Below are positions 34,921 through 46,000 of a DNA stretch of 64,000 bases, in pieces. The stretch comes from Lenisia limosa (lineage: Eukaryota; Protista; Breviatea), in contig LPNZ01003549.1 in the NCBI GenBank assembly GCA_001655205.1, forward strand, positions 1-64,000, read 5' to 3'. Position numbers and translations under genes: made by a program. Numbering within the stretch: position 1 is the first letter of the stretch; every line of letters begins with the position of its first letter. Below the pieces are notes generated by a model. It saw only the letters and a list, made by a program, of their open reading frames with translations. It was not told where the DNA came from and searched no databases.

Positions 34921-37900
34921 ATGTCACAGGTATGCGTGCTAATGCTGACATGTATAGGTTAAGCGGCATGTTGAGTACCGAGTTGAGCCTAATGGTGTTG
35001 CTGTTGCCACGTTGACCAGCCCCACCAATTGCATTGGTTTGCCAGCTACGTGATTTCTCATTTCTACAAAAATTTTATTGACTTGAGCCTCTTGAATCAC
35101 TCCTCACTGTATCAAAATATCAAAATAGCGTTTTTGTAAGAAATTCAATGAGTGAAATAGTGATGAATATGTAGGTGAGCAAGTGGTCGATGAAATGTTT
35201 GAGGCTGTTGGGCATGTGATGAGTGATCCAAAGGTAAAGGGCCTTGTCGTAACAGGAGGCGGAAAGTTGTTTTCAACTGGAGCCAATTTGGCCCTCATCC
35301 ACAAGTATCAAGTTGAAGGTTCGCCATTTTGGTTTGACACTCAGACGAACCCATGGCTCCTTTCTTGAAGACTTTGGCAGACATGTTATCACGACTGGAA
35401 AGTGGACCAAAACCCACTGTAGCCTTGGTGACAGGATATTGTCTTGGAGGAGGTCTTGAGCTTGCTCTTTCTTGCAACCATTTGATCATTGGTGGGAAGG
35501 CAACACTTGGTCTTCCGGAAGTCACCCACGGTTTCCTTCCCGCAGCTGGAGGTTTGCTTTATTTGGCCTTAACTTTCAGGATGTGTCAGACTTCCTCGTG
35601 TTATTTGTCCCCTTATCGCATCAAAATACATTATGGTATGTCTTTTTGAAACTAATTTCCAGAATGCAACGCTGATTAATGAAAAAAAAGCGGAAATGCT
35701 CGGACTTGCTCACACAGTTGTTCCATCCTTTCAAGAGGCCATGGGTACGCTAGTCTCAAGTTGACTGTTAAGCTGTTGCATCAAATACCGTCATTGCCAT
35801 GGCTGAAAATCGACTTGTCCGAAGAATGCCGTGTAGTCATCCTACAATGAATAAAGAAGACTTCCAAAAGGTGAGTCAATGTATATGCGTCTGATTGTCC
35901 AGATCAAATCAGCAGTTACGGCTCCAAAACGCATCAAACATGCCTCCTCCGTTATGGATGTCATTGAAGTTGGATTGACAAAGGGGTGAGTCCCCCGTGA
36001 TTTAATATCCAAGCCCTATTGAAGGATTGCATGCCGAGAGAACCGCGTTTGATGTTTTGTGTCACGATCCCAAGTCAAAAGCAAAGCTGCATGTCTTTAT
36101 GTCACAAAAAATGGCTGGAAAGTCTTCCAACTTGCCAGGACCTGCCAAGATTCAATCCGTTGGTGTTATTGGTAAGGCATGCCAAAGTAACATTTGAGGT
36201 GGTGGTCTCATGGGTGCGGGGATTGCTTCAGCCTCTCTTATTAAGGGGTACAAGGTAAGCTTTGCTCTATTACCAATGTCACAATCGCAATTACACTCAG
36301 GTGATGATCAAAGAGATTTCAGCCAAATTTGCCAATGCTGCCGGTTAGTTGGTGCTGACTCCTCAATTTGTAGCTCTTCGTGTTAAAGCCTTCCTATCAT
36401 CTGCTGTCAAGGCCAAACGTCTCCCTCAACAAGCCATGTGTTTGTCAAACATTATCTCACCATTCAGTTAAGGTACTTGGCAACCTAAAAGTGACCACGA
36501 ATCTCAATGATCTGAGGCAAATGGACATTGTCATTGAAGCAGCTACTGAGCGACTGGATATTAAACAAAAACTCTTTGTTGATTTAGAAAAAACAGTTGC
36601 GTTATCATGTATTTTGGTCACGAACACAAGCACTCTCACTCTCAATACTGTTGGTGAAAGTTGGCTAAATGACACTTTCAGATTTCAAAGAACATGATGA
36701 AACCCGATCGTCTCAATGGTTTGCCACATAGTCATTAATCCTCAGGCATGCACTTCTTCAACCCGGTCCTTCTTATGCCTTTGGTGGAAGTTGTTCATCA
36801 CAAGAACACTTCACCTTCAGACTTAACATCTATCATTGGTGCGGTTCCATGGTCACTGACAGAATAGGTTTCACAAGAAAACTCGGAAAAACTCCAATTT
36901 TGGCCAAAAGCTGCACCGGATTTGCAGTCAATCGAATGTTTGGTTAGAGGCGGGGGGTTTAGCTCCACATCATTCGAATGAATGACAGTTGTTTTTACCT
37001 GGCATTTAGGTCCGTTTTTTATGGCGGCCATGGCTGCTGTTTATGCAGGTGCCCAGCCTAAAGATGTTGACGGTGTGTAATAACATTTTCATGACAGGTT
37101 TTATCTTACATTGTAATATTATGATGCTATGATCCAACCTTGGTTGATATACTTGGAATATAAAGTCAGAATTAGTTGTATTAGTTTGAGTCGCGGTAGT
37201 TCTGACTTTTCAGCCGCATTGGAGTCCTTTGGAATGGCAATGGGTCCCTTCAAAACTGCAGACTTGGTCGGAATAGACACCTTTGCTGCTGTACAGAGGT
37301 AATCAAACCAACACAAGTCATAGACAAATTCATGATGCATACCCTGACCGCTCTATCACCATCCCTTTAGACAAATTCATGACGCGTACCCTGACCGCTC
37401 TATCACCATCCCTCTGCTTGAAGACCTTGTCAAAGCAAGAAATCTCGGACAAAAAACTGGTATGCTAGGTAATATGATAACATACATGCAGGAAAGGGAT
37501 TCTACCAGTATGAAAGAGGAAGTCGCCGTACACATCCGCGCACTGATTTGGATGGCATCTTGGAGGTTTCAAGATTAAAGACGGGGTATGAAATTTCAGC
37601 ACACCTGACTGTTCAGTCTCGGAATTGAAATGTCCCAAAAGAGCGTTGTACCCAAAGATCCCAAACAGGTGAGATCAGGAAATAGTCTAACTATCCCATT
37701 AGCTTGCTGAGTCTCTGGTATCCTTCCTAGTGTGTGAGTGTTGTCGAGTTATGAGTGAACAAGTTGCAACGGCAGGTGACATCGACTTTGCGGCTGTGGC
37801 TGGAATGGGATTCCCGGCAACCAAGTATGTTCAGTTATAGGCTGACATTCAGGGGCGGACCATTATGGTGGGCTGACCAAATCGGCATTGACAGAGTCAT

Positions 37901-37993
37901 TGCCAATGTTGTAGCCTTGGCTCCTCTGTGTCCCAAACTGTTCCAAGTACCCGACTGCATGTTGAAGCATAGTAAACTCAGCATCAAATTGAG
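34921..37993 (+). other. MFP portion (crotonase/ECH + HACD domains; plant AIM1/MFP2- or FadB-like)
   Basis: [37 protein letters not shown] (both catalytic Glu); [75 protein letters not shown]. Confidence 0.95.
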
Positions 37994-39638
37994 GTTTGTA
38001 GAAAACGCATTTGTGACTTTTCAGTCCCCCAATTCTACAAACTGACGAATACGAAGCCTACACCACCCCTCTTTCAGGTGAGATGCCGCAACATCTGATA
38101 TTCCCAGGGCCCGCCTTCCAGTCACAAAGAGAAGACGATATTGTCGTTGTGTCATTTGCTCGAACTGCGGTAACAAAAGCGAAGCGCGGAAGTTTCAACA
38201 ACACACACCCTGCTGAAATGGTTGGAATTCCCCGACATTACCCTCCAGATGTACACCGTAATCAAAAGCACAATGGACCAATGTCCAAACCTGGCTCCCG
38301 GGGGCGTTGGTGACGTCATCTGCGGTACGGACTTGAGATACTGACATTTAGGCCGTGTTCTTGGGCTTGGTGACGTTGAGGCCACATACTGCCGCATGGC
38401 TGCACTTCAAGCCGGGGTGCCATACTCCGTTCCACTTCGCCTCACAAACCGTCTGTGCTCCTCCGGCCTGCAAGCGGTTGCCGACGTGGCCCAGGGCATT
38501 CGGACCGGAATGTACGACGTTGGCCTTGCCGTCGGCTTCGAGTCCATGACAAGACATCATTTGGCTGGAGGTGAGCCCGCTCTTCTGTCATTGGTTCAGA
38601 TGGTGATATTGAGAAATGGTCCCGAGCAGAGGGAGACGCGAGTGACTGCTTTATGAATATGGGGATGACAAGTGACAATGTTGCAAGAGACTATCATGTG
38701 ACTCGAAATGAACAAGTAATGAGGGATGAGTGGCTTATGCCTTCTAGGACGAATTTGCTGCTGAGTCCCATAGCAAGGCCAACCAAGCTTCTTCCCTCAG
38801 ACACAGTAAGTCTTAATAAATCTTATCACTTCAGCCGAAATTACACCATTGCAAACTACAGCATTCATGAAAAAGTCAAGGAAGGGCGAGGCAAAACTGG
38901 TAGAAATCCTCTTATGTGACTTTTCAGGAGACCGTAACGGTGAGCAAAGACGAAGGCGTCCGATCCTCTTCCACCGTCGACAGCTTAGCAAAGCTTCGTC
39001 CTGTGTTTTCCAAGAACGGGACCACCACACCTGGCAATGCGTCTCAGCTCAGCGGTTTGCCAATGTGTCCTGACAGTGTAGATGGAGCAGCAGCCATCCT
39101 CCTTATGACTCGCGCTAAAGCAAGGCAGTTTGGTGTCAAGCCAAGAGCCGTGTTCAGGTCCGCTCATGAAAACACTGATCTTTCAGATCGTTCAGTGTTG
39201 CCGGGGTACCGCCTGCAACAATGGGAATGGGCCCGGCCGCGGCCATCCCTTTGGCCCTCAAGGCTGCTAATGTTGGTGCCGGCCATGACGTCACTATGTA
39301 GCTTGACAAGAGTGACGTCGACATTTGGGAGGTCAATGAAGCTTTTGCAAGTCAGGCCAAATGCTGTCTCGATATGCTTGGTGTTGACCCAAAGAAGTGA
39401 GACCTTCGAAGCGTTAACGTTTTAGAGCCAATCTAAGAGGAGGAGCGATCGCCCTAGGGCATCCCCTTGGAATGACAGGCGCGCGAATGACGATTACGGC
39501 CCTTGACCAGTTGAGAGTGGCAAAGGCAAAAACGGCGGTGGTATCAATGTGCATTGGAACGGGAATGGGTAGGTGAGGGCTTTGGTTAATGTTGTAGGTG
39601 CTGCTGCTGTGTACGAAAGAGACTCAACCTGCTTATAA
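34921..39638 (+). CDS. Predicted single-chain trifunctional beta-oxidation enzyme: enoyl-CoA hydratase + L-3-hydroxyacyl-CoA dehydrogenase + 3-ketoacyl-CoA thiolase
   Basis: MFP frame continues through introns 37994-38024 and 38078-38107 in-frame into the thiolase (…[37 protein letters not shown]…); single stop TAA 39636-39638. Confidence 0.8.
37321..37414 (+). repeat. 47-bp tandem duplication of a 3' splice site plus exon start
   Basis: tagacaaattcatga(t/c)gc(a/g)taccctgaccgctctatcaccatccct x2. Confidence 0.9.
38108..39638 (+). other. Thiolase portion (peroxisomal/FadA-type 3-ketoacyl-CoA thiolase)
   Basis: [30 protein letters not shown] (catalytic Cys), [77 protein letters not shown]. Confidence 0.95.
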
Positions 39639-40002
39639 GCTCTATTCAACTTCCTTAATTCTTTATTTGTTTTTATTATCTGCAATGCAACCATCACAAG
39701 AAAAATAAAAGAGAATAAATAAAATCAGTAAACAAAGTATATGACTGTCCATAAGCGTTATGATTAGGAAACACTCCTCCTCACACGCGGACCTTTCAAA
39801 GTTGTTTGTGTCTAAAATGTTATTGAGATACCCAAATAATATCGTCACCAACCGGTTTCTTTTCAGCAGGCGTTTTGGTTACTCGTTTCGGTTTCGGACT
39901 AGTGGGGCCTTCTGTCTTCTTTACTCTGCAAAATAATCAAAATAATTTAAAACCAAGGTTACTCCCTGGTTGAAGACAAGACCAAATTGTTGACCGAACC
40001 CC

Positions 40003-43000
40003 TTACGAAGCCCTTGTGATTCTTGGCCTTGGCATGCTGGAAGTGGTAATAGGCACCTTGTTAGAATCCAACGGTGCAACTGCGGTGCTGGACGCAGACT
40101 TTTGGCCTGGTTTAGGTCTCCGAGCCGCGACAGCCACACGATTACTAGACGGCGATGGCGCCAAAGGAGCTGGAGGCGGCCTGCCGCGCGCAAGAAGAAG
40201 CCCGCTGCTACCACGCATTGCAGCGCGTCTGCTGACCCTTGAAGAGACTGCTGGCGGTGGCGGCGGCTGCGCTTTTGTTTGACTTGCAAGGGCCCGCACT
40301 AGAGGAATCTCCTTCTCCTCCTCCTTTATCTTTGGCTTCGTGACCGAGCTTGAGCGTTTGCGTCGAGGTGTGGCGTGAGGAGTGGATTTTGGTGTAGATT
40401 TTGGCGTGGATTTTGGTGTAGATTTTGGTGTGGTCTTTGCTGGGGTCTTTGCCGAGGTGCTTGACGTTCTCTTGCGGCGCTTCCTTCTTGAAGACGAGGA
40501 TGGTGACAGCGGCTCAGACGGCTCCGTAATAATATCGGGGGACACCTCGGGGGACGGAAGGGGGGGATTGAATAGGCTCATCAAGGAGGATGGCACAACG
40601 GCACGGCTTGCGAAGGGCGGTGTGAACTCCACTTCCTCGGCATCTTGGGGCTGCAGATCGCTTAGATCGAGGGGAGTGGCTGGAATGGACCGCTCAGGCG
40701 TGGGCAGTAAGTCATTATCACTGAACAGTCCAAGTTCATCGCAATCATAACGATCGAAGAGGACAGAGGTGGCAGCCGGGGTAGCAATGGGCTGGAACAA
40801 CGCCTCGGGTTGTCGCGGCGGCACGGCGTCTTTTTGTGGAGTAGGTTGCATTGGAGGTTTACGTGGAGTCTGAGGAGAAACGCTCTTTAGACTCCGAGGG
40901 GAAGACACTGGTGTGAGACAGCATAAGCGAGGCGACTGGAGGGGCTGGCGGGGGGATGGTAGGGATTGTCTTGGTGACGATTGCGGCGAGGTCAAGGATT
41001 GCGACCGTGCGAATGGAGCAACAGTGGGACCGGATTTCGGCCCAGGGAAAAGCGTTTTCACCGGCGTTTTGACAGGAGTCTGTGCGATGTAGGGAGGGAG
41101 CGAGCCAGCGGAGGAGAAATGCTCCTTCAAGTCAGGAGAGCTGAGGGGAGACAGCTCGGGCGAAGAAATCAACGTCACTTCCTCGGGTGAGAGGATTGAA
41201 CTGAAGTCAACCGCCTTATTGGGTACGGTGGCATAGAGGCTACTCGGTCGAGGCAAGGCCGGCCGCGGACCTGGCGACGCCACGCCATGGTACGACAAAC
41301 TCCGGCGGCGGCTGACATTATGTCGTCTTGTTGGCGTGTCGAGGGGCGACGTGGTTGCCAATGGGCTGACAAGGGTTTGGGGGGAGAATGTCGGAAGGTC
41401 AGAAGGCGGCTGGAAGGTACGCGGCGATAGTTGCGGTCGCGGCGAGCTGAGTCTGCGGACTCGTGGGGACGGCTCTTCCTCGGCCTCCTCGGGTACTGCT
41501 AAGTTAGAACCAAGCGGAGCACAATGGAAATAGAGTGGATCCGAGAAATTAAGTGATTATTAATGAAGTGAAGAGAATAACGGATAAATGGACGAAAAAA
41601 ATCCGGATCCAAATATCTTGCCCTCTTAAAATAGCCTCTACAATAGTAATGCAGCTGGTTTATGGTATGCAATGAGGCTTACTTGGAGGGGTGGATTCAC
41701 GGAGATTCTCAACCTGCTGGATTCTCTTCGCAGTTGGAGCAATTTTTGGATCAGACAATAAGGCAGCAGTTTGGTAGTTTGCCTGGATGTGCTGAAGGCT
41801 CATTGATGATGATGTTGATGTTCGTAGTGTTCCTCTGAAGTCACTGGCGGCCTTTTTGCCTGCCCAACCTGTCAAATGATAACCTATATCAGTAAGATAA
41901 AGCAAAAGCAGTAAACTCTTCAAACAATGTCACATGGGTCCAAACTTACGAGACAATGCACCTGGTAGCTCTCCAAGATCGGCAAACTCAAAGTAAAATG
42001 CTGTGCGCCCAGACTACAGAGTCAAAAGAGGACCCATCAATTGGAGTCAAAAGAAGGCCCATCAAGTGACTCGCAGTACCCAACAAAATCTGATTGAAAG
42101 CTCACGTAGTAGGTGTAGAGGTTGGTGAAGATTTCAAGACTATCAGCCTCCTCAGCCACTGCAGCGGAATCGTCGACTGCCTGACCCCACATCTGTGTCG
42201 TGACAGTATGTTGCGGACTTACAATGTAAGCTGGTCTGTTTGGGATACCAATGACCCCAGCCGCTGCCGTTCCGGATGCTACTCCAAAGGAAACGGACAC
42301 TTTCGAAATTTCGTCAACCTAAGCGAAGTGAGACCTTCGTCGTCCCACCTTTGCTGCTGTAATGGTGTCCTTCAGAGTGTCCCGGGCGTCCAAACTGAAT
42401 GCACAAACTAGAGTGTTACAGAAGGGAGAAACAGCAAACGTTGGGCAGCATGGTCATTCTCTGCACCAGGTAAGCCTCCAACAACTCGGTATGTTCCTTC
42501 GTAGGGTGCAAGCTAAAGAGTCACACGCCAACGTCTAAGCAAACCTTATGCAAAGACGGGTACTCCTTGAGGGGATTGTCAAGAGAAGAGTAGATGTGGT
42601 TCAAGAGCAGGGTGATCATTTCAGGATTTAGGACCTAGAATCAGTCAAAACCCCAAAAATGTAATAATACCATTGAAAGTTCAGGGTAGTTCCGAATTGT
42701 GCATGACATAACGGCAACGGTAGTCAGTCTGTCCAATGGGGGGGATGTTGCTCTGAAAGGTCACTTATTCGGTTACCTTACTCTTCGTCAGTCATGAGGT
42801 GGTTGATCAAAGGAGGTACAGAGTGAAGTGGTAGCATCGATTCCAAAACTTCGCGTGAACGCAACGACGCTTTATTACGCGCAAGCTAAAAGTGTTATTG
42901 TTTAATTTCCAAACCATTAAAAGGAAAGACTTCCTCCATCGCCTCTCTGACGTATACCCGACAACCAGTCCAACTAGAAACGAACCTGCAGAGCGTTAGC

Positions 43001-46000
43001 GGAAGGGGGGAAGCAAAAACAAAAAAAGACAAATCAACTCTATTGCCCAAAGATTTGACACACACGGGGGTTGAAAAAACCCCCCAAACAAATCCCAGTC
43101 CTGCAATAACAGGTCTTTCATCATTGGGTAAACAAGGAAAAACTTCAATGATAATTATGTAATGTATGTGCGTAAAACTATATAACTTGAACCAAATAAT
43201 CTAAATTTTGAAACAAAGCAAATGACAAAAACAAATAATTACGAGAATTAATTGTTATATGCAGAATAACAGTGGGGGGGGGGGGGGNNNNNNNNNNNNN
43301 NNNNNNNNNNNNNNNNNNNNNNNNNNNNNNNNNNNNNNNNNNNNNNNNNNNNNNNNNNNNNNNNACGACGACGATGAAAACAGAAGGGCTACAAACGACA
43401 CAAAATGTGATGCAAGAAATCCACCAAACGTCCACTAAAAGGATGAGATAAACTTTAAACCAACATTGAACGGAGTGCGGCCCATTGAAAAAAGCAACGG
43501 CTGTGCGAGGGATACCTGGCGGCAATGAGAACAAGGAGGTGCGGTGAATGAACATATTAATTGTATAATATATCATATCATATATTATTACTATATAGGT
43601 ACTATATGATATACTATATATCATATACGATATATAGCTTTTAGAATGGTGAACTGTTACACCGACTCCTTATATCATAACATATGATGTGGGTACAAGT
43701 ATACTATATGAAGATATATATGATATAGACATTATTTCCAACCGAGACTCCTAGTCAATCATCACTACTCCAACATACAGCGGAAGCGAGGAATTCCGTT
43801 TGGTCAGGGTAATGTGCTAAATTAAAGACAAACTCAGCAGTGAGAGTACCAATAAGGCATGTTGTCAAGATCGGACCCACAATCTAACGCATTAGGCAAA
43901 AGAGCTCATCGACCAACATTGTATTTGGAGAGTAATTTGTTGGAGTGGATCAAGCCAGCCCAAATGACAAAGATAGTAACCTGGATAGCCTAAAGGGTTT
44001 AATCGCAAATTGCTGCGAATGCTTACTGCCATGACAAGAATGAAGAATGCCCTTCCTTGTTCCAGCAAAATCATGAATTGTGCACTAGAAAGTGAGTTGG
44101 TAGTTGAGTAAATTTAAAGTCATGACGGCGTACCAACTCGCCGCTATCATGATGGGAAGAACAATTTTCAGAACTCTTCTGTTGCCTTTAGCGTAGTGAG
44201 AGAAAAACGGGGCCTCCAGTCTGAAAAGTGAGAACAAAGGAAGTCCCCACCCAGTTTGCGAGAACGCTAGTGGAAACGTTGAAATGAGTGGAAGAGAATT
44301 TGACGACTCGGGTGCCATGTTACCGCTTGTCAAAATAACGGCCGACGCTGTATAGTCAAAAAGAAGTCAAGGCTTACATCCGAGGGTGGATGGGGTGATA
44401 GTGCACTGTGGGTCCAAGACACGCAAGTCTTCAAGGGGAAAACAGGGATTCTCTGAACGCATTGATATATCCAAACTACTCAATTAGTAAACACGGATAT
44501 GGAATACCCATCTTCGTCCGAAGACGACACGACGTCAAAATCGCTTTCGTTGGGGTCAGACAGACATGAATCAGACACCACTTGCTCATTGCCGCGTTTG
44601 GGTACCGGCGGTGCTCGTGCCACTATCTCAGCTGCATCTACNNNNNNNNNNNNNNNNNNNNNNNNNNNNNNNNNNNNNNNNNNNNNNNNNNNNNNNNNNN
44701 NNNNNNNNNNNNNNNNNNNNNNNNNNNNNNNNNNNNNNNNNNNNNNNNNNNNNAAAGCTTCGACCGTTGATATGACTGAAGGGGACACAATAACAGATCC
44801 TGGGATACTACAATGTCAAATAAAGGAAGCACAAACCAAAAGTCAATCAGAGAATTTGCTAAATGAAGAGTTGAGCCGTAAACGCCAAACTGGAGACTCA
44901 CCTGCCCAGTTAATCTTCCAGTGAAAAATGTGTGACATTGTTTGCAGTGTGTATTGAACTAGGTACATAATTACATACCATATGCATATATCATATGTAG
45001 TGTAGTCTCGCTTAAATAATAAATAGCTACTAAAAAAACAGTTTGTCATAGATTAATATAATAAGAGATATTAAGTTGCTACAAATAAAACAATATAATA
45101 AGAGATATTAAGTTGCTACAAATAAAACAATAATATCTAGAACAATCGTTACTTATAAATATCTAGTACAATAGCTACTTATAAATATCTACTATATGGA
45201 TGGTACAATAGCTACTTATAAATATATATGGATGGTACAATAGATACTTATAAATATGCATATATATAGATGGTACAATAGTATACTTTATAATATTTTT
45301 GTTAATAAACCTCCAACTTGGCCAATAACTCCTGCCTGAAGGGGTCCGGTGTGAACCGCTATGCGACAAGCCTCAACATGACTAGAATCCTTCACCAAAG
45401 CCTGAAGGTTCTGGGCAAGGCGAAGACCTATTGCATGAATATTGTTGGGTTCCAACCATAAACCGCATGTGTGGACATCCTGCTCGGGCAGCCTGCTGTT
45501 GCAATGTACATCTGGTCCAAAGCAAGGACTAAAGTATTACGATTGCGCTTACATGTTCGTACAAACCAGGATGGCATGAAAGATGCTCTGCAGCTTCATC
45601 AAAAGCAGCATACAATGAATTGAGTGAGTTCAGCTAAACGGTGAAAAACACTCCAGAATAGCAGCATACTCTGCTCTGGTCGTCCAATTTCCTCGAAAAC
45701 TGTACATTGCAGATGATGACTGTTGCCTTTGGAGTCAAATGATGAAAATATAAAAGAATGCAATGACATGAACTCACCAAAGGGTAATACTCGGAAACAC
45801 TCAATCCATCTTTTAGATGACCAGCCAAGTGTGGCGGTATGAGGTTCGAAATCACTGTGTCAATGTGTTTTTTACTGAGAGCGACCTGCGAGTAAGTTCA
45901 CTAACACAAAGACCACAGTACTCTTTTCTCATTGTGGAAAATCTTTAAGGATTGCTGGGTTTTCCGTTTATAGTAAATTGTTCCAATGACAACACAGAGG

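What the first reader, a model, noticed from the sequence alone, without database searches (positions are those of the whole stretch)
34921..39638. Single-polypeptide trifunctional beta-oxidation enzyme (ECH-HACD-thiolase fusion)
Seen: after the HACD C-terminal GGPLWWAD motif, donor AG|gtttgt (37994) to ttttcag| (38024, 31 nt), a 53-nt exon, then TCAG|gtgaga (38078) to ttcccag| (38107, 30 nt) put the thiolase exactly in frame: ...[44 protein letters not shown]... Both introns match the size and donor style of this genome. Unspliced, MFP would stop at 38045 and the only thiolase ATG (38083, inside the second intron) would be 37 nt away, leaving no room for a terminator plus promoter. All catalytic residues look intact (two ECH Glu, HACD His, thiolase Cys/His/Cys). 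Established: these three activities are normally on separate chains (FadB+FadA, FadJ+FadI, HADHA+HADHB, peroxisomal MFP + ACAA1/KAT) that assemble for substrate channelling. Inference: a covalent version of that complex with a ~30-aa linker.
Basis: partly seen in the sequence, partly recalled or inferred. Interest (0 to 1): 0.88.

Follow-up and report, generated by a model that had tools for sequence, protein, structure and literature searches.

The report
Fused three-enzyme fat-breakdown gene, already known
This protist gene does appear to join three fatty-acid beta-oxidation enzymes (hydratase, dehydrogenase, thiolase) into one 1126-residue protein, but the same fusion was published for red algae in 2016 and sits in databases for several other protist groups, so this is a new member of a known kind.

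Summary
A homology-guided spliced model gives one gene, from ATG 34921 to TAA 39636-39638. It has 36 exons, 35 GT-AG introns (30 of them 26-34 nt) and encodes 1126 aa without a stop. The domain order is ECH, then 3HCDH_N/3HCDH, then Thiolase_N/C, and all catalytic residues are intact.

The two junction introns (37994-38024 and 38078-38107) match this gene's donor, branch-site and acceptor pattern. About 0.05 such sites are expected by chance in that gap, and two are present. Only intron 1 is needed for the fusion, because intron 2 is in frame and stop-free.

The model aligns colinearly over residues 1-1122 with more than 80 fused proteins at 36-40% identity.

The architecture is not new. Cyanidioschyzon merolae CMR380C is annotated as this fusion and was described in 2016 as a red-algal feature (PMC4928187). 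Fused orthologues also exist in Cyanophora, Andalucia, Heterolobosea sp. BB2 and Balamuthia.

Three caveats remain:
- The one poly(A) RNA run has no coverage of the gene, so splicing is unproven.
- A 47-nt tandem repeat (2 or 3 copies, depending on the assembly) duplicates a 3' splice site inside the gene.
- The protein has neither PTS1 nor PTS2.

An earlier first-stage note (s1-201263) flagged the same junction.

The parts
34921..39638 (+). Whole coding region of the fused gene. It has 36 exons, 35 GT-AG introns, a 3381-nt CDS and encodes 1126 aa. The ATG is at 34921 and the TAA at 39636-39638.
   Evidence: Spliced protein-to-genome alignments against 12-18 fused homologues, followed by model assembly.
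34921..35744 (+). Exons 1-6, the enoyl-CoA hydratase (crotonase) domain, with catalytic E116 and E136.
   Evidence: Pfam ECH_1/ECH_2 hits on exon pieces. Residue mapping against E. coli FadB E119/E139.
36014..37993 (+). [quoted passage not shown] They carry S415, H436, E448 and N486, and end in ...GGPLWWAD...HSKLSIKL.
   Evidence: Pfam 3HCDH_N and 3HCDH hits. The best solved relative is Arabidopsis MFP2, 2wtb. Residue mapping.
37321..37413 (+). 47-nt tandem repeat, 2.0 copies here and 3 in the ENA assembly L002. It duplicates the TAG acceptor plus the first 44 nt of exon 19. A productive frame needs the distal acceptor (intron 37299-37370).
   Evidence: TRF. Window versus L002 difference. Logan unitig break and 1.5x depth at 37340-37413. 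Frame test.
37994..38024 (+). Junction intron 1 (31 nt, phase 2): GTTTGT...TGTGACTTTTCAG. Its removal shifts the MFP frame into the thiolase frame. If it is retained, the frame stops at TGA 38043-38045.
   Evidence: The best-scoring guide, P0284, chooses this intron.
38025..38077 (+). 53-nt linker micro-exon encoding [18 protein letters not shown]. It is not conserved, as is true of the linkers in the fused homologues.
   Evidence: Alignment of the junction across 16 fused proteins. Per-exon identity.
38078..38107 (+). Junction intron 2 (30 nt, phase 1): GTGAGA...TCTGATATTCCCAG. It is in frame and stop-free if retained. It contains ATG 38083-38085, the only possible start for a stand-alone thiolase.
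38108..39638 (+). Exons 25-36: a thiolase of the peroxisomal KAT/ACAA1 type, with C821, H1078 and C1108. The C-terminus is ...YERDSTCL.
   Evidence: Pfam Thiolase_N hits. The best PDB matches are 2wua, 2c7y, 2wu9, 1pxt and 2iik, well ahead of FadA-type chains. Residue mapping.

Best explanation
This is one nuclear gene of an intron-dense protist. Once its 35 tiny introns are removed it encodes a 1126-residue chain. The chain is a plant-type peroxisomal multifunctional protein (enoyl-CoA hydratase plus L-3-hydroxyacyl-CoA dehydrogenase), then a linker of about 30 residues, then a peroxisomal-type 3-ketoacyl-CoA thiolase.

It is a divergent member of an existing family of MFP-thiolase fusions known from red algae, a glaucophyte, jakobid and heterolobosean excavates, and an amoebozoan.

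Inferred mechanism, not shown here: thiolases are obligate dimers, so the chain should dimerise through its thiolase domains. That would give a two-chain particle equivalent to the alpha2-beta2 FadBA or TFP core. It would carry out steps 2-4 of each beta-oxidation cycle, or their reversal, with fixed 1:1 stoichiometry and with the active sites held close together.
For: Gene model:
- The ORF is intact across 36 exons, and all introns are GT-AG.
- Both junction introns fit the gene's own pattern: 31 and 30 nt, a GTNNG donor, and a TGAC or TGAT branch motif 7-12 nt from YAG. About 0.05 such sites are expected in the gap and two are seen.
- The junction is identical in Logan contigs of run X1 and in the ENA contig L002.

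Domains and residues:
- Pfam domains run in the order ECH_1, 3HCDH_N, 3HCDH, Thiolase_N.
- All catalytic residues are conserved.

Comparison with other proteins:
- blastp of the model gives single colinear HSPs over residues 1-1122 with more than 80 fused proteins.
- An unbiased HMMER scan of 1.8 billion representatives with one thiolase exon returned fused proteins among its best full-length hits: P0002, P0008, P0012, P0013, P0023 and P0099.
- The fusion is annotated in C. merolae and is present in Porphyridium, Chondrus, Galdieria, Cyanophora, Andalucia, Heterolobosea sp. BB2 (a single transcript contig) and Balamuthia.
- It is published in PMC4928187.
- Linkers in these homologues are also short and unconserved.
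Against: - There is no RNA evidence. The only poly(A) run, X2, has zero depth over the gene although the neighbouring minus-strand gene is covered.
- No transcript-derived protein of this gene is in the protein database, only unspliced ORF fragments.
- A 47-nt tandem repeat duplicates a 3' splice site. If the proximal acceptor were used, the frame would break and end at residue 613. The two assemblies disagree on copy number.
- The sequence sits on a long branch, 2.5 substitutions per site for the MFP half. This could reflect relaxed constraint.
- No PTS1 or PTS2 was found.
- The dimer and channelling mechanism is inference only.
Confidence: 0.85

Rival explanations
1. There are two separate tandem genes. 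An MFP gene ends at TGA 38043-38045 with intron 1 unspliced. A thiolase gene starts at ATG 38083. The apparent in-frame join is coincidence.
For: Read without splicing, a stop (38043-45) and an in-frame ATG (38083) both exist. No RNA data exclude this reading. Homology-guided alignment will always find some frame-restoring GT..AG pair, so the aligner's success alone proves nothing.
Against: - Only 37 nt separate the stop from the ATG.
- Two introns matching this gene's full pattern lie in a gap where 0.05 are expected.
- The linker exon is stop-free in the required frame.
- The nearest relatives of both halves are themselves fused, in the same order.
Confidence: 0.05
2. It is a fusion gene that is decaying, or is largely unproductive in this lineage. 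The 47-nt tandem duplication of a splice acceptor diverts splicing to a frameshifted product. The gene is not expressed, and its fast evolution reflects relaxed constraint.
For: - The repeat has 2 or 3 copies depending on the assembly, and the proximal acceptor leads to a premature stop.
- RNA depth over the gene is zero.
- The terminal branch is very long.
- No targeting signal was found.
Against: - A 3381-nt ORF stays open across 35 correctly phased introns, with every catalytic residue kept. That is unlikely without selection.
- The distal acceptor has a CTGAC branch motif upstream and restores the frame.
- The thiolase half keeps 52% identity to the BB2 orthologue.
- One small RNA run (47 M letters of contigs) is a weak test of expression.
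Confidence: 0.08
3. The locus makes several products: the fused chain, an MFP-only isoform by retention of intron 1, and perhaps a thiolase-only isoform from an internal start at ATG 38083.
For: Retaining intron 1 gives a clean stop 18 codons later. ATG 38083 is in frame with the thiolase. This reading is compatible with the best explanation rather than exclusive of it.
Against: Nothing positive supports it. The BB2 transcript set shows a fused form and N-terminal fragments only, with no thiolase-only form.
Confidence: 0.15

Closest known systems
Red-algal three-domain MFP: Cyanidioschyzon merolae CMR380C (BAM82571.1 / XP_005538607.1) and the Porphyridium purpureum homologue, described by Mori et al. 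2016 (PMC4928187)
   Same: The Pfam order is the same: ECH_1, 3HCDH_N, 3HCDH, Thiolase_N, Thiolase_C on one chain of about 1130-1150 aa. It aligns colinearly with the window protein at about 37% identity over residues 1-1123. The linker is short and unconserved.
   Different: Most red-algal members end in a PTS1 (SRL, AKL or GKL), and the window protein does not. The window gene has 35 introns, whereas C. merolae has a contiguous ORF. The window sequence is much more divergent.
Fused orthologues in Heterolobosea sp. BB2 (P0284), Andalucia godoyi ANDGO_06968 (P0298), Balamuthia mandrillaris (P0233) and Cyanophora paradoxa (P0235)
   Same: The architecture is the same. BB2 is the nearest relative of both halves of the window protein, at 52% identity in the thiolase half.
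   Different: BB2, Andalucia and Balamuthia carry an N-terminal PTS2-like nonapeptide (for example RREVLLSHL or RQTVLLGHV) ahead of the hydratase. My pattern found none in Cyanophora. The window protein starts directly at the hydratase fold.
Plant peroxisomal MFP2/AIM1 with KAT2, and human ACAA1 (PDB 2wtb, 2c7y, 2wu9, 2iik)
   Same: These are the closest solved relatives of the two halves. The chemistry and catalytic residues are the same.
   Different: They are separate polypeptides, each with its own targeting signal (PTS1 on MFP, PTS2 on thiolase). No stable complex between them is known to me; that statement rests on my own knowledge.
Bacterial FadBA/FadJI and the mitochondrial trifunctional protein HADHA/HADHB (PDB 1wdk, 6dv2, 5zqz)
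   Same: Three consecutive beta-oxidation activities are held in one particle, with the thiolase dimer as its core.
   Different: They have two gene products. Their thiolase subtype is more distant, scoring 33-34 bits against 55-76 bits for peroxisomal thiolases with the same exon. Whether the fused chain is arranged the same way was not tested.

Membership tests
MFP-thiolase fusion (three-domain MFP as in C. merolae CMR380C) | ECH, 3HCDH_N, 3HCDH and thiolase domains in that order on one strand, joined in one reading frame | tested here: met
   Pfam hits on exon pieces in this order. The spliced model has an open 1126-codon frame.
MFP-thiolase fusion (three-domain MFP as in C. merolae CMR380C) | Full-length colinear similarity to recognised members | tested here: met
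   Single blastp HSPs covering residues 1-1122 with P0157 (C. merolae), P0180 (Porphyridium), P0284 (BB2) and more than 80 others, at 36-40% identity.
MFP-thiolase fusion (three-domain MFP as in C. merolae CMR380C) | Catalytic residues of all three enzymes present | tested here: met
   E116 and E136; S415, H436, E448 and N486; C821, H1078 and C1108. All are invariant across 15 fused homologues.
MFP-thiolase fusion (three-domain MFP as in C. merolae CMR380C) | A single mRNA and protein spanning both halves | tested here: inconclusive
   RNA run X2 has zero depth over the gene, and no other RNA run holds it. No transcript-derived protein of this gene is in the database.
MFP-thiolase fusion (three-domain MFP as in C. 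merolae CMR380C) | Peroxisomal targeting signal, either C-terminal PTS1 or N-terminal PTS2. This is usual in the family but not universal. | tested here: not met
   The C-terminus is DSTCL, and no R-x6-H-L motif lies in the first 70 residues. Among 86 fused proteins, 60 have PTS1, 4 have PTS2 and 22 have neither; C. merolae and the P0228 group are among those with neither. This was pattern matching only.
FadBA / mitochondrial trifunctional protein complex | Alpha (ECH-HACD) and beta (thiolase) subunits as separate polypeptides forming alpha2-beta2 or larger assemblies | tested here: not met
   The two halves are joined in one frame. The thiolase exon scores 55-76 bits with peroxisomal thiolases and 33-34 bits with FadA-type chains.
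FadBA / mitochondrial trifunctional protein complex | Substrate channelling between active sites | not testable with these tools
   This needs enzymology or a structure. No fused chain is in the PDB.

The most novel reading that the evidence does not exclude
The MFP-thiolase fusion may not be a red-algal peculiarity. It could be an old, pan-eukaryotic form of the peroxisomal beta-oxidation core, found in Archaeplastida, Discoba, Amoebozoa and now a likely breviate. Its targeting signal would have been re-solved differently in each lineage. In this apparently anaerobic protist the chain has lost both PTS1 and PTS2, and it may work outside peroxisomes. One possibility is that it runs in the reductive direction (reverse beta-oxidation) as an electron sink.
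Probability: 0.12. Interest if true: 0.5.

Novelty: new member of a known kind. Interest (0 to 1): 0.25.

Why it matters
The fusion itself is not a discovery. It has been annotated in C. merolae for years and was published in 2016.

What this locus adds is modest:
- It is one more lineage carrying the fusion. Other agents of this scan take it to be a breviate, which I did not test.
- It lacks recognisable peroxisomal signals.
- It sits in a genome with about 10 tiny introns per kb of coding sequence.

Together with the database hits in excavates, an amoebozoan and a glaucophyte, it shows that the published statement "a feature of red algae" is too narrow.

The family is still uncharacterised. 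I found no solved structure of a fused chain, and no enzymology in the papers I could search. A natural single-chain beta-oxidation core therefore remains a reasonable target for structural and channelling studies. A red-algal or heterolobosean orthologue with transcript support would be a better starting point than this gene.

Tried and rejected
- **RNA evidence.** Two run searches (one search failed because the machine was busy) and one read lay gave no coverage of the gene. The second read-laying run was not used, because no run holds the transcript.
- **Minimum-intron path search.** It produced an open frame but a wrong model with far too few introns. It was replaced by protein-guided spliced alignment.
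- **E. coli FadB/FadA as guides.** They were too distant to define the exons.
- **TG- and GG-ended acceptors.** Other agents reported these for this genome. Allowing them did not change the model or its scores.
- **Trees of each half.** The window sequence is a long branch. Fused proteins were not resolved as one clade against plant KAT or MFP, so I make no claim about single or multiple origin, or about donors.
- **Whole-protein tools on the window protein.** The spliced protein has no reference form, so I did not submit it to structure prediction, whole-protein database searches or family scans. I used exon pieces and homologues instead.
- **Structure prediction of a homologue.** I did not run it, because the tool returns no coordinates with which to compare the arrangement with FadBA.
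- **The 141-nt intron (37073-37213).** It contains two intron-like modules. Including the 86-nt piece between them breaks the frame, so I kept it as one intron.
- **Literature beyond Mori 2016.** Searches for a description of the fusion found nothing further in the held library.
Full report
**Observation.** The exon carrying GGPLWWAD ends ...AAATTGAG. A 31-nt stretch GTTTGT...TTTTCAG follows (37994-38024), then a 53-nt exon, then a 30-nt stretch GTGAGA...TTCCCAG (38078-38107), and then the thiolase N-terminus. Left unspliced, the MFP frame stops at TGA 38043-38045. The only ATG ahead of the thiolase is at 38083, inside the second intron.

**Gene model.** A search for the path with the fewest introns gave an open frame but a poor model, and E. 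coli FadB/FadA were too distant to guide exon finding.

The consensus model has these features:
- ATG at 34921 and TAA at 39636-39638.
- 36 exons and 35 GT-AG introns.
- A 3381-nt CDS encoding 1126 aa with no stop.

Thirty introns are 26-34 nt long. The other five are 46, 67, 72, 138 and 141 nt. That is about 10 introns per kb of coding sequence. Other agents reported TG- or GG-ended acceptors for this genome, but allowing them changed nothing here.

Pfam hits on exon pieces run in the order ECH_1, 3HCDH_N, 3HCDH, Thiolase_N. In an alignment with E. coli FadB/FadA and 15 fused proteins, all catalytic residues are present. These are ECH E116 and E136; HACD S415, H436, E448 and N486; and thiolase C821, H1078 and C1108.

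**Are the two junction introns real?** An aligner will always find some frame-restoring GT..AG pair, so I tested them on their own merits.

The 23 introns chosen by nearly all guides share four features:
- a GTNNG donor;
- a length of 26-32 nt;
- a TRAY branch motif (CTGAC, TTAAC or CTGAT) 6-12 nt from the 3' end;
- a YAG acceptor.

Both junction introns have all four. The tail of intron 1, TGACTTTTCAG, is identical to that of intron 37073-37213. This strict pattern occurs 22 times in the gene, against 28.7 +/- 5.6 per 64 kb in Markov shuffles. About 0.05 would therefore be expected in the 115-nt gap, and two are present.

Intron 2 is 30 nt and stop-free, so the fusion depends only on intron 1. 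Skipping the 53-nt exon would break the frame.

The junction DNA is identical in Logan contigs of run X1 and in the ENA assembly contig fetched as L002.

**RNA.** The only RNA run offered is X2, a poly(A) metatranscriptome of 47 M letters of contigs. It has zero depth across the gene. It does cover the convergent neighbour gene and shows its 41-nt intron. A second, narrower search found no other holder. The protein databases hold only unspliced, prokaryote-style ORF fragments of this locus, such as P0001. Splicing of this gene is therefore not shown directly.

**Comparative evidence.** I ran a HMMER scan of 1.8 billion representative proteins with one thiolase exon. Among its best full-length hits were proteins with long N-terminal extensions. 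Pfam shows these to be complete or partial ECH-3HCDH-thiolase fusions.

One cluster contains Cyanidioschyzon merolae BAM82571.1 / XP_005538607.1, named [quoted passage not shown].

Two wider searches listed about 80 fused proteins of 1000-1220 aa. They come from:
- Red algae: Galdieria, Porphyridium, Chondrus, Pyropia, Hildenbrandia, Agarophyton and Gracilaria. Shorter entries from Compsopogon and Timspurckia also carry both halves.
- Cyanophora paradoxa.
- Andalucia godoyi.
- Heterolobosea sp. BB2, as a single 1158-aa ORF on one transcript contig.
- Balamuthia mandrillaris.

blastp of my model against these proteins gives single colinear HSPs over residues 1-1122 at 36-40% identity. The region between the two halves is short and unconserved in all of them, as it is here (about residues 701-731).

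By solved structures, the halves are of the Arabidopsis MFP2 type (2wtb) and the peroxisomal thiolase type (2wua, 2c7y, 2wu9, 1pxt, 2iik). The FadA type scores far lower. No fused chain is in the PDB.

**Literature.** Mori et al. [quoted passage not shown] In their hands the protein did not localise to peroxisomes. I found no other description and no enzymology.

**Phylogeny.** In trees of each half the window protein is a long branch: 2.5 substitutions per site for the MFP half and 1.0 for the thiolase half. Its nearest relative by path length is the Heterolobosea BB2 protein in both trees. All fused thiolases fall in a supported clade with plant KAT2. The fused proteins are not resolved as one clade, so I draw no conclusion on one origin versus several.

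**Caveats found on the way.**
1. A 47-nt tandem repeat (37321-37413, 2.0 copies, 95% match) duplicates the TAG acceptor and the first 44 nt of exon 19.
   - The ENA assembly has a third copy, and the Logan unitigs break there with 1.5x depth.
   - Only the last acceptor keeps the frame. The proximal one (a 25-nt intron) leads to a stop at residue 613.
   - The two copies differ at two synonymous positions.
2. The protein has neither a PTS1 (its C-terminus is DSTCL) nor an N-terminal PTS2-like motif.
   - Among 86 fused proteins, 60 carry PTS1, and these are essentially the red-algal type.
   - Four carry an N-terminal PTS2-like nonapeptide: Andalucia, BB2, Balamuthia and one Logan protein.
   - Twenty-two carry neither, including C. 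merolae and the P0228 group. This was pattern matching only.

**Organism.** Other agents of this scan concluded that the genome is that of the breviate Lenisia limosa. The run metadata (2016, a poly(A) metatranscriptome in the same study as the DNA) fit that conclusion. I did not test it.

**How it most likely works (inference).** Thiolases are obligate dimers. A chain with the thiolase at its C-terminus should therefore form a homodimer whose core is the thiolase dimer, with two MFP arms. That is the covalent equivalent of an alpha2-beta2 FadBA particle. It would carry out hydration, NAD-dependent oxidation and thiolysis at fixed 1:1 stoichiometry. Whether intermediates are channelled, and in which direction the pathway runs in a presumably anaerobic host, is unknown.

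**Verdict.** The fusion reading is supported at about 0.85, with no direct RNA proof. The architecture is already known, so this is a new and divergent member of a known kind.

Noticed in passing
window 37321-37413 (and L002 4354-4400): A 47-nt tandem repeat inside the gene duplicates a 3' splice site plus 44 nt of exon. It has 2 copies in the window and 3 in the ENA assembly. The Logan unitig there has 1.5x depth, which suggests a copy-number polymorphism. The copies differ at two synonymous sites.
   Followed up: partly
window 37073-37213: The 141-nt intron is built of a 25-nt and a 30-nt intron-like module flanking an 86-nt segment (37098-37183). Including that segment would frameshift to a stop at residue 522, so it may be a poison exon or a nested-intron remnant.
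   Followed up: partly
window 34921-39638: Intron density is extreme, at 35 introns in a 3381-nt CDS (about 10 per kb). The lengths peak sharply at 27-30 nt, and a TRAY branch motif sits only 6-12 nt from the acceptor. The first exon is just 9 nt.
   Followed up: partly
fused homologues P0284, P0298, P0233, P0236 versus red-algal P0169, P0180, P0220 and others: Targeting signals differ by lineage. Red-algal fusions keep a C-terminal PTS1. The excavate and amoebozoan fusions instead carry a PTS2-like nonapeptide placed at the new N-terminus, ahead of the hydratase. The Cyanidioschyzon group (C. merolae and its closest relatives), the P0228 group and the window protein show neither.
   Followed up: partly
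window 39789-41361 (minus strand): The convergent neighbour gene is expressed in run X2 and shows a spliced 41-nt GT-AG intron (39812-39852 on the minus strand). Its large exon encodes a Ser/Pro/Thr-rich low-complexity protein with TPKS repeats. Its 3' end lies within about 150 nt of the fused gene's stop.
   Followed up: no
window 43288-43364 and 44642-44753: Two runs of N in the window are filled with real sequence in the ENA assembly contig (L002 10349-10394 and 11672-11760).
   Followed up: no
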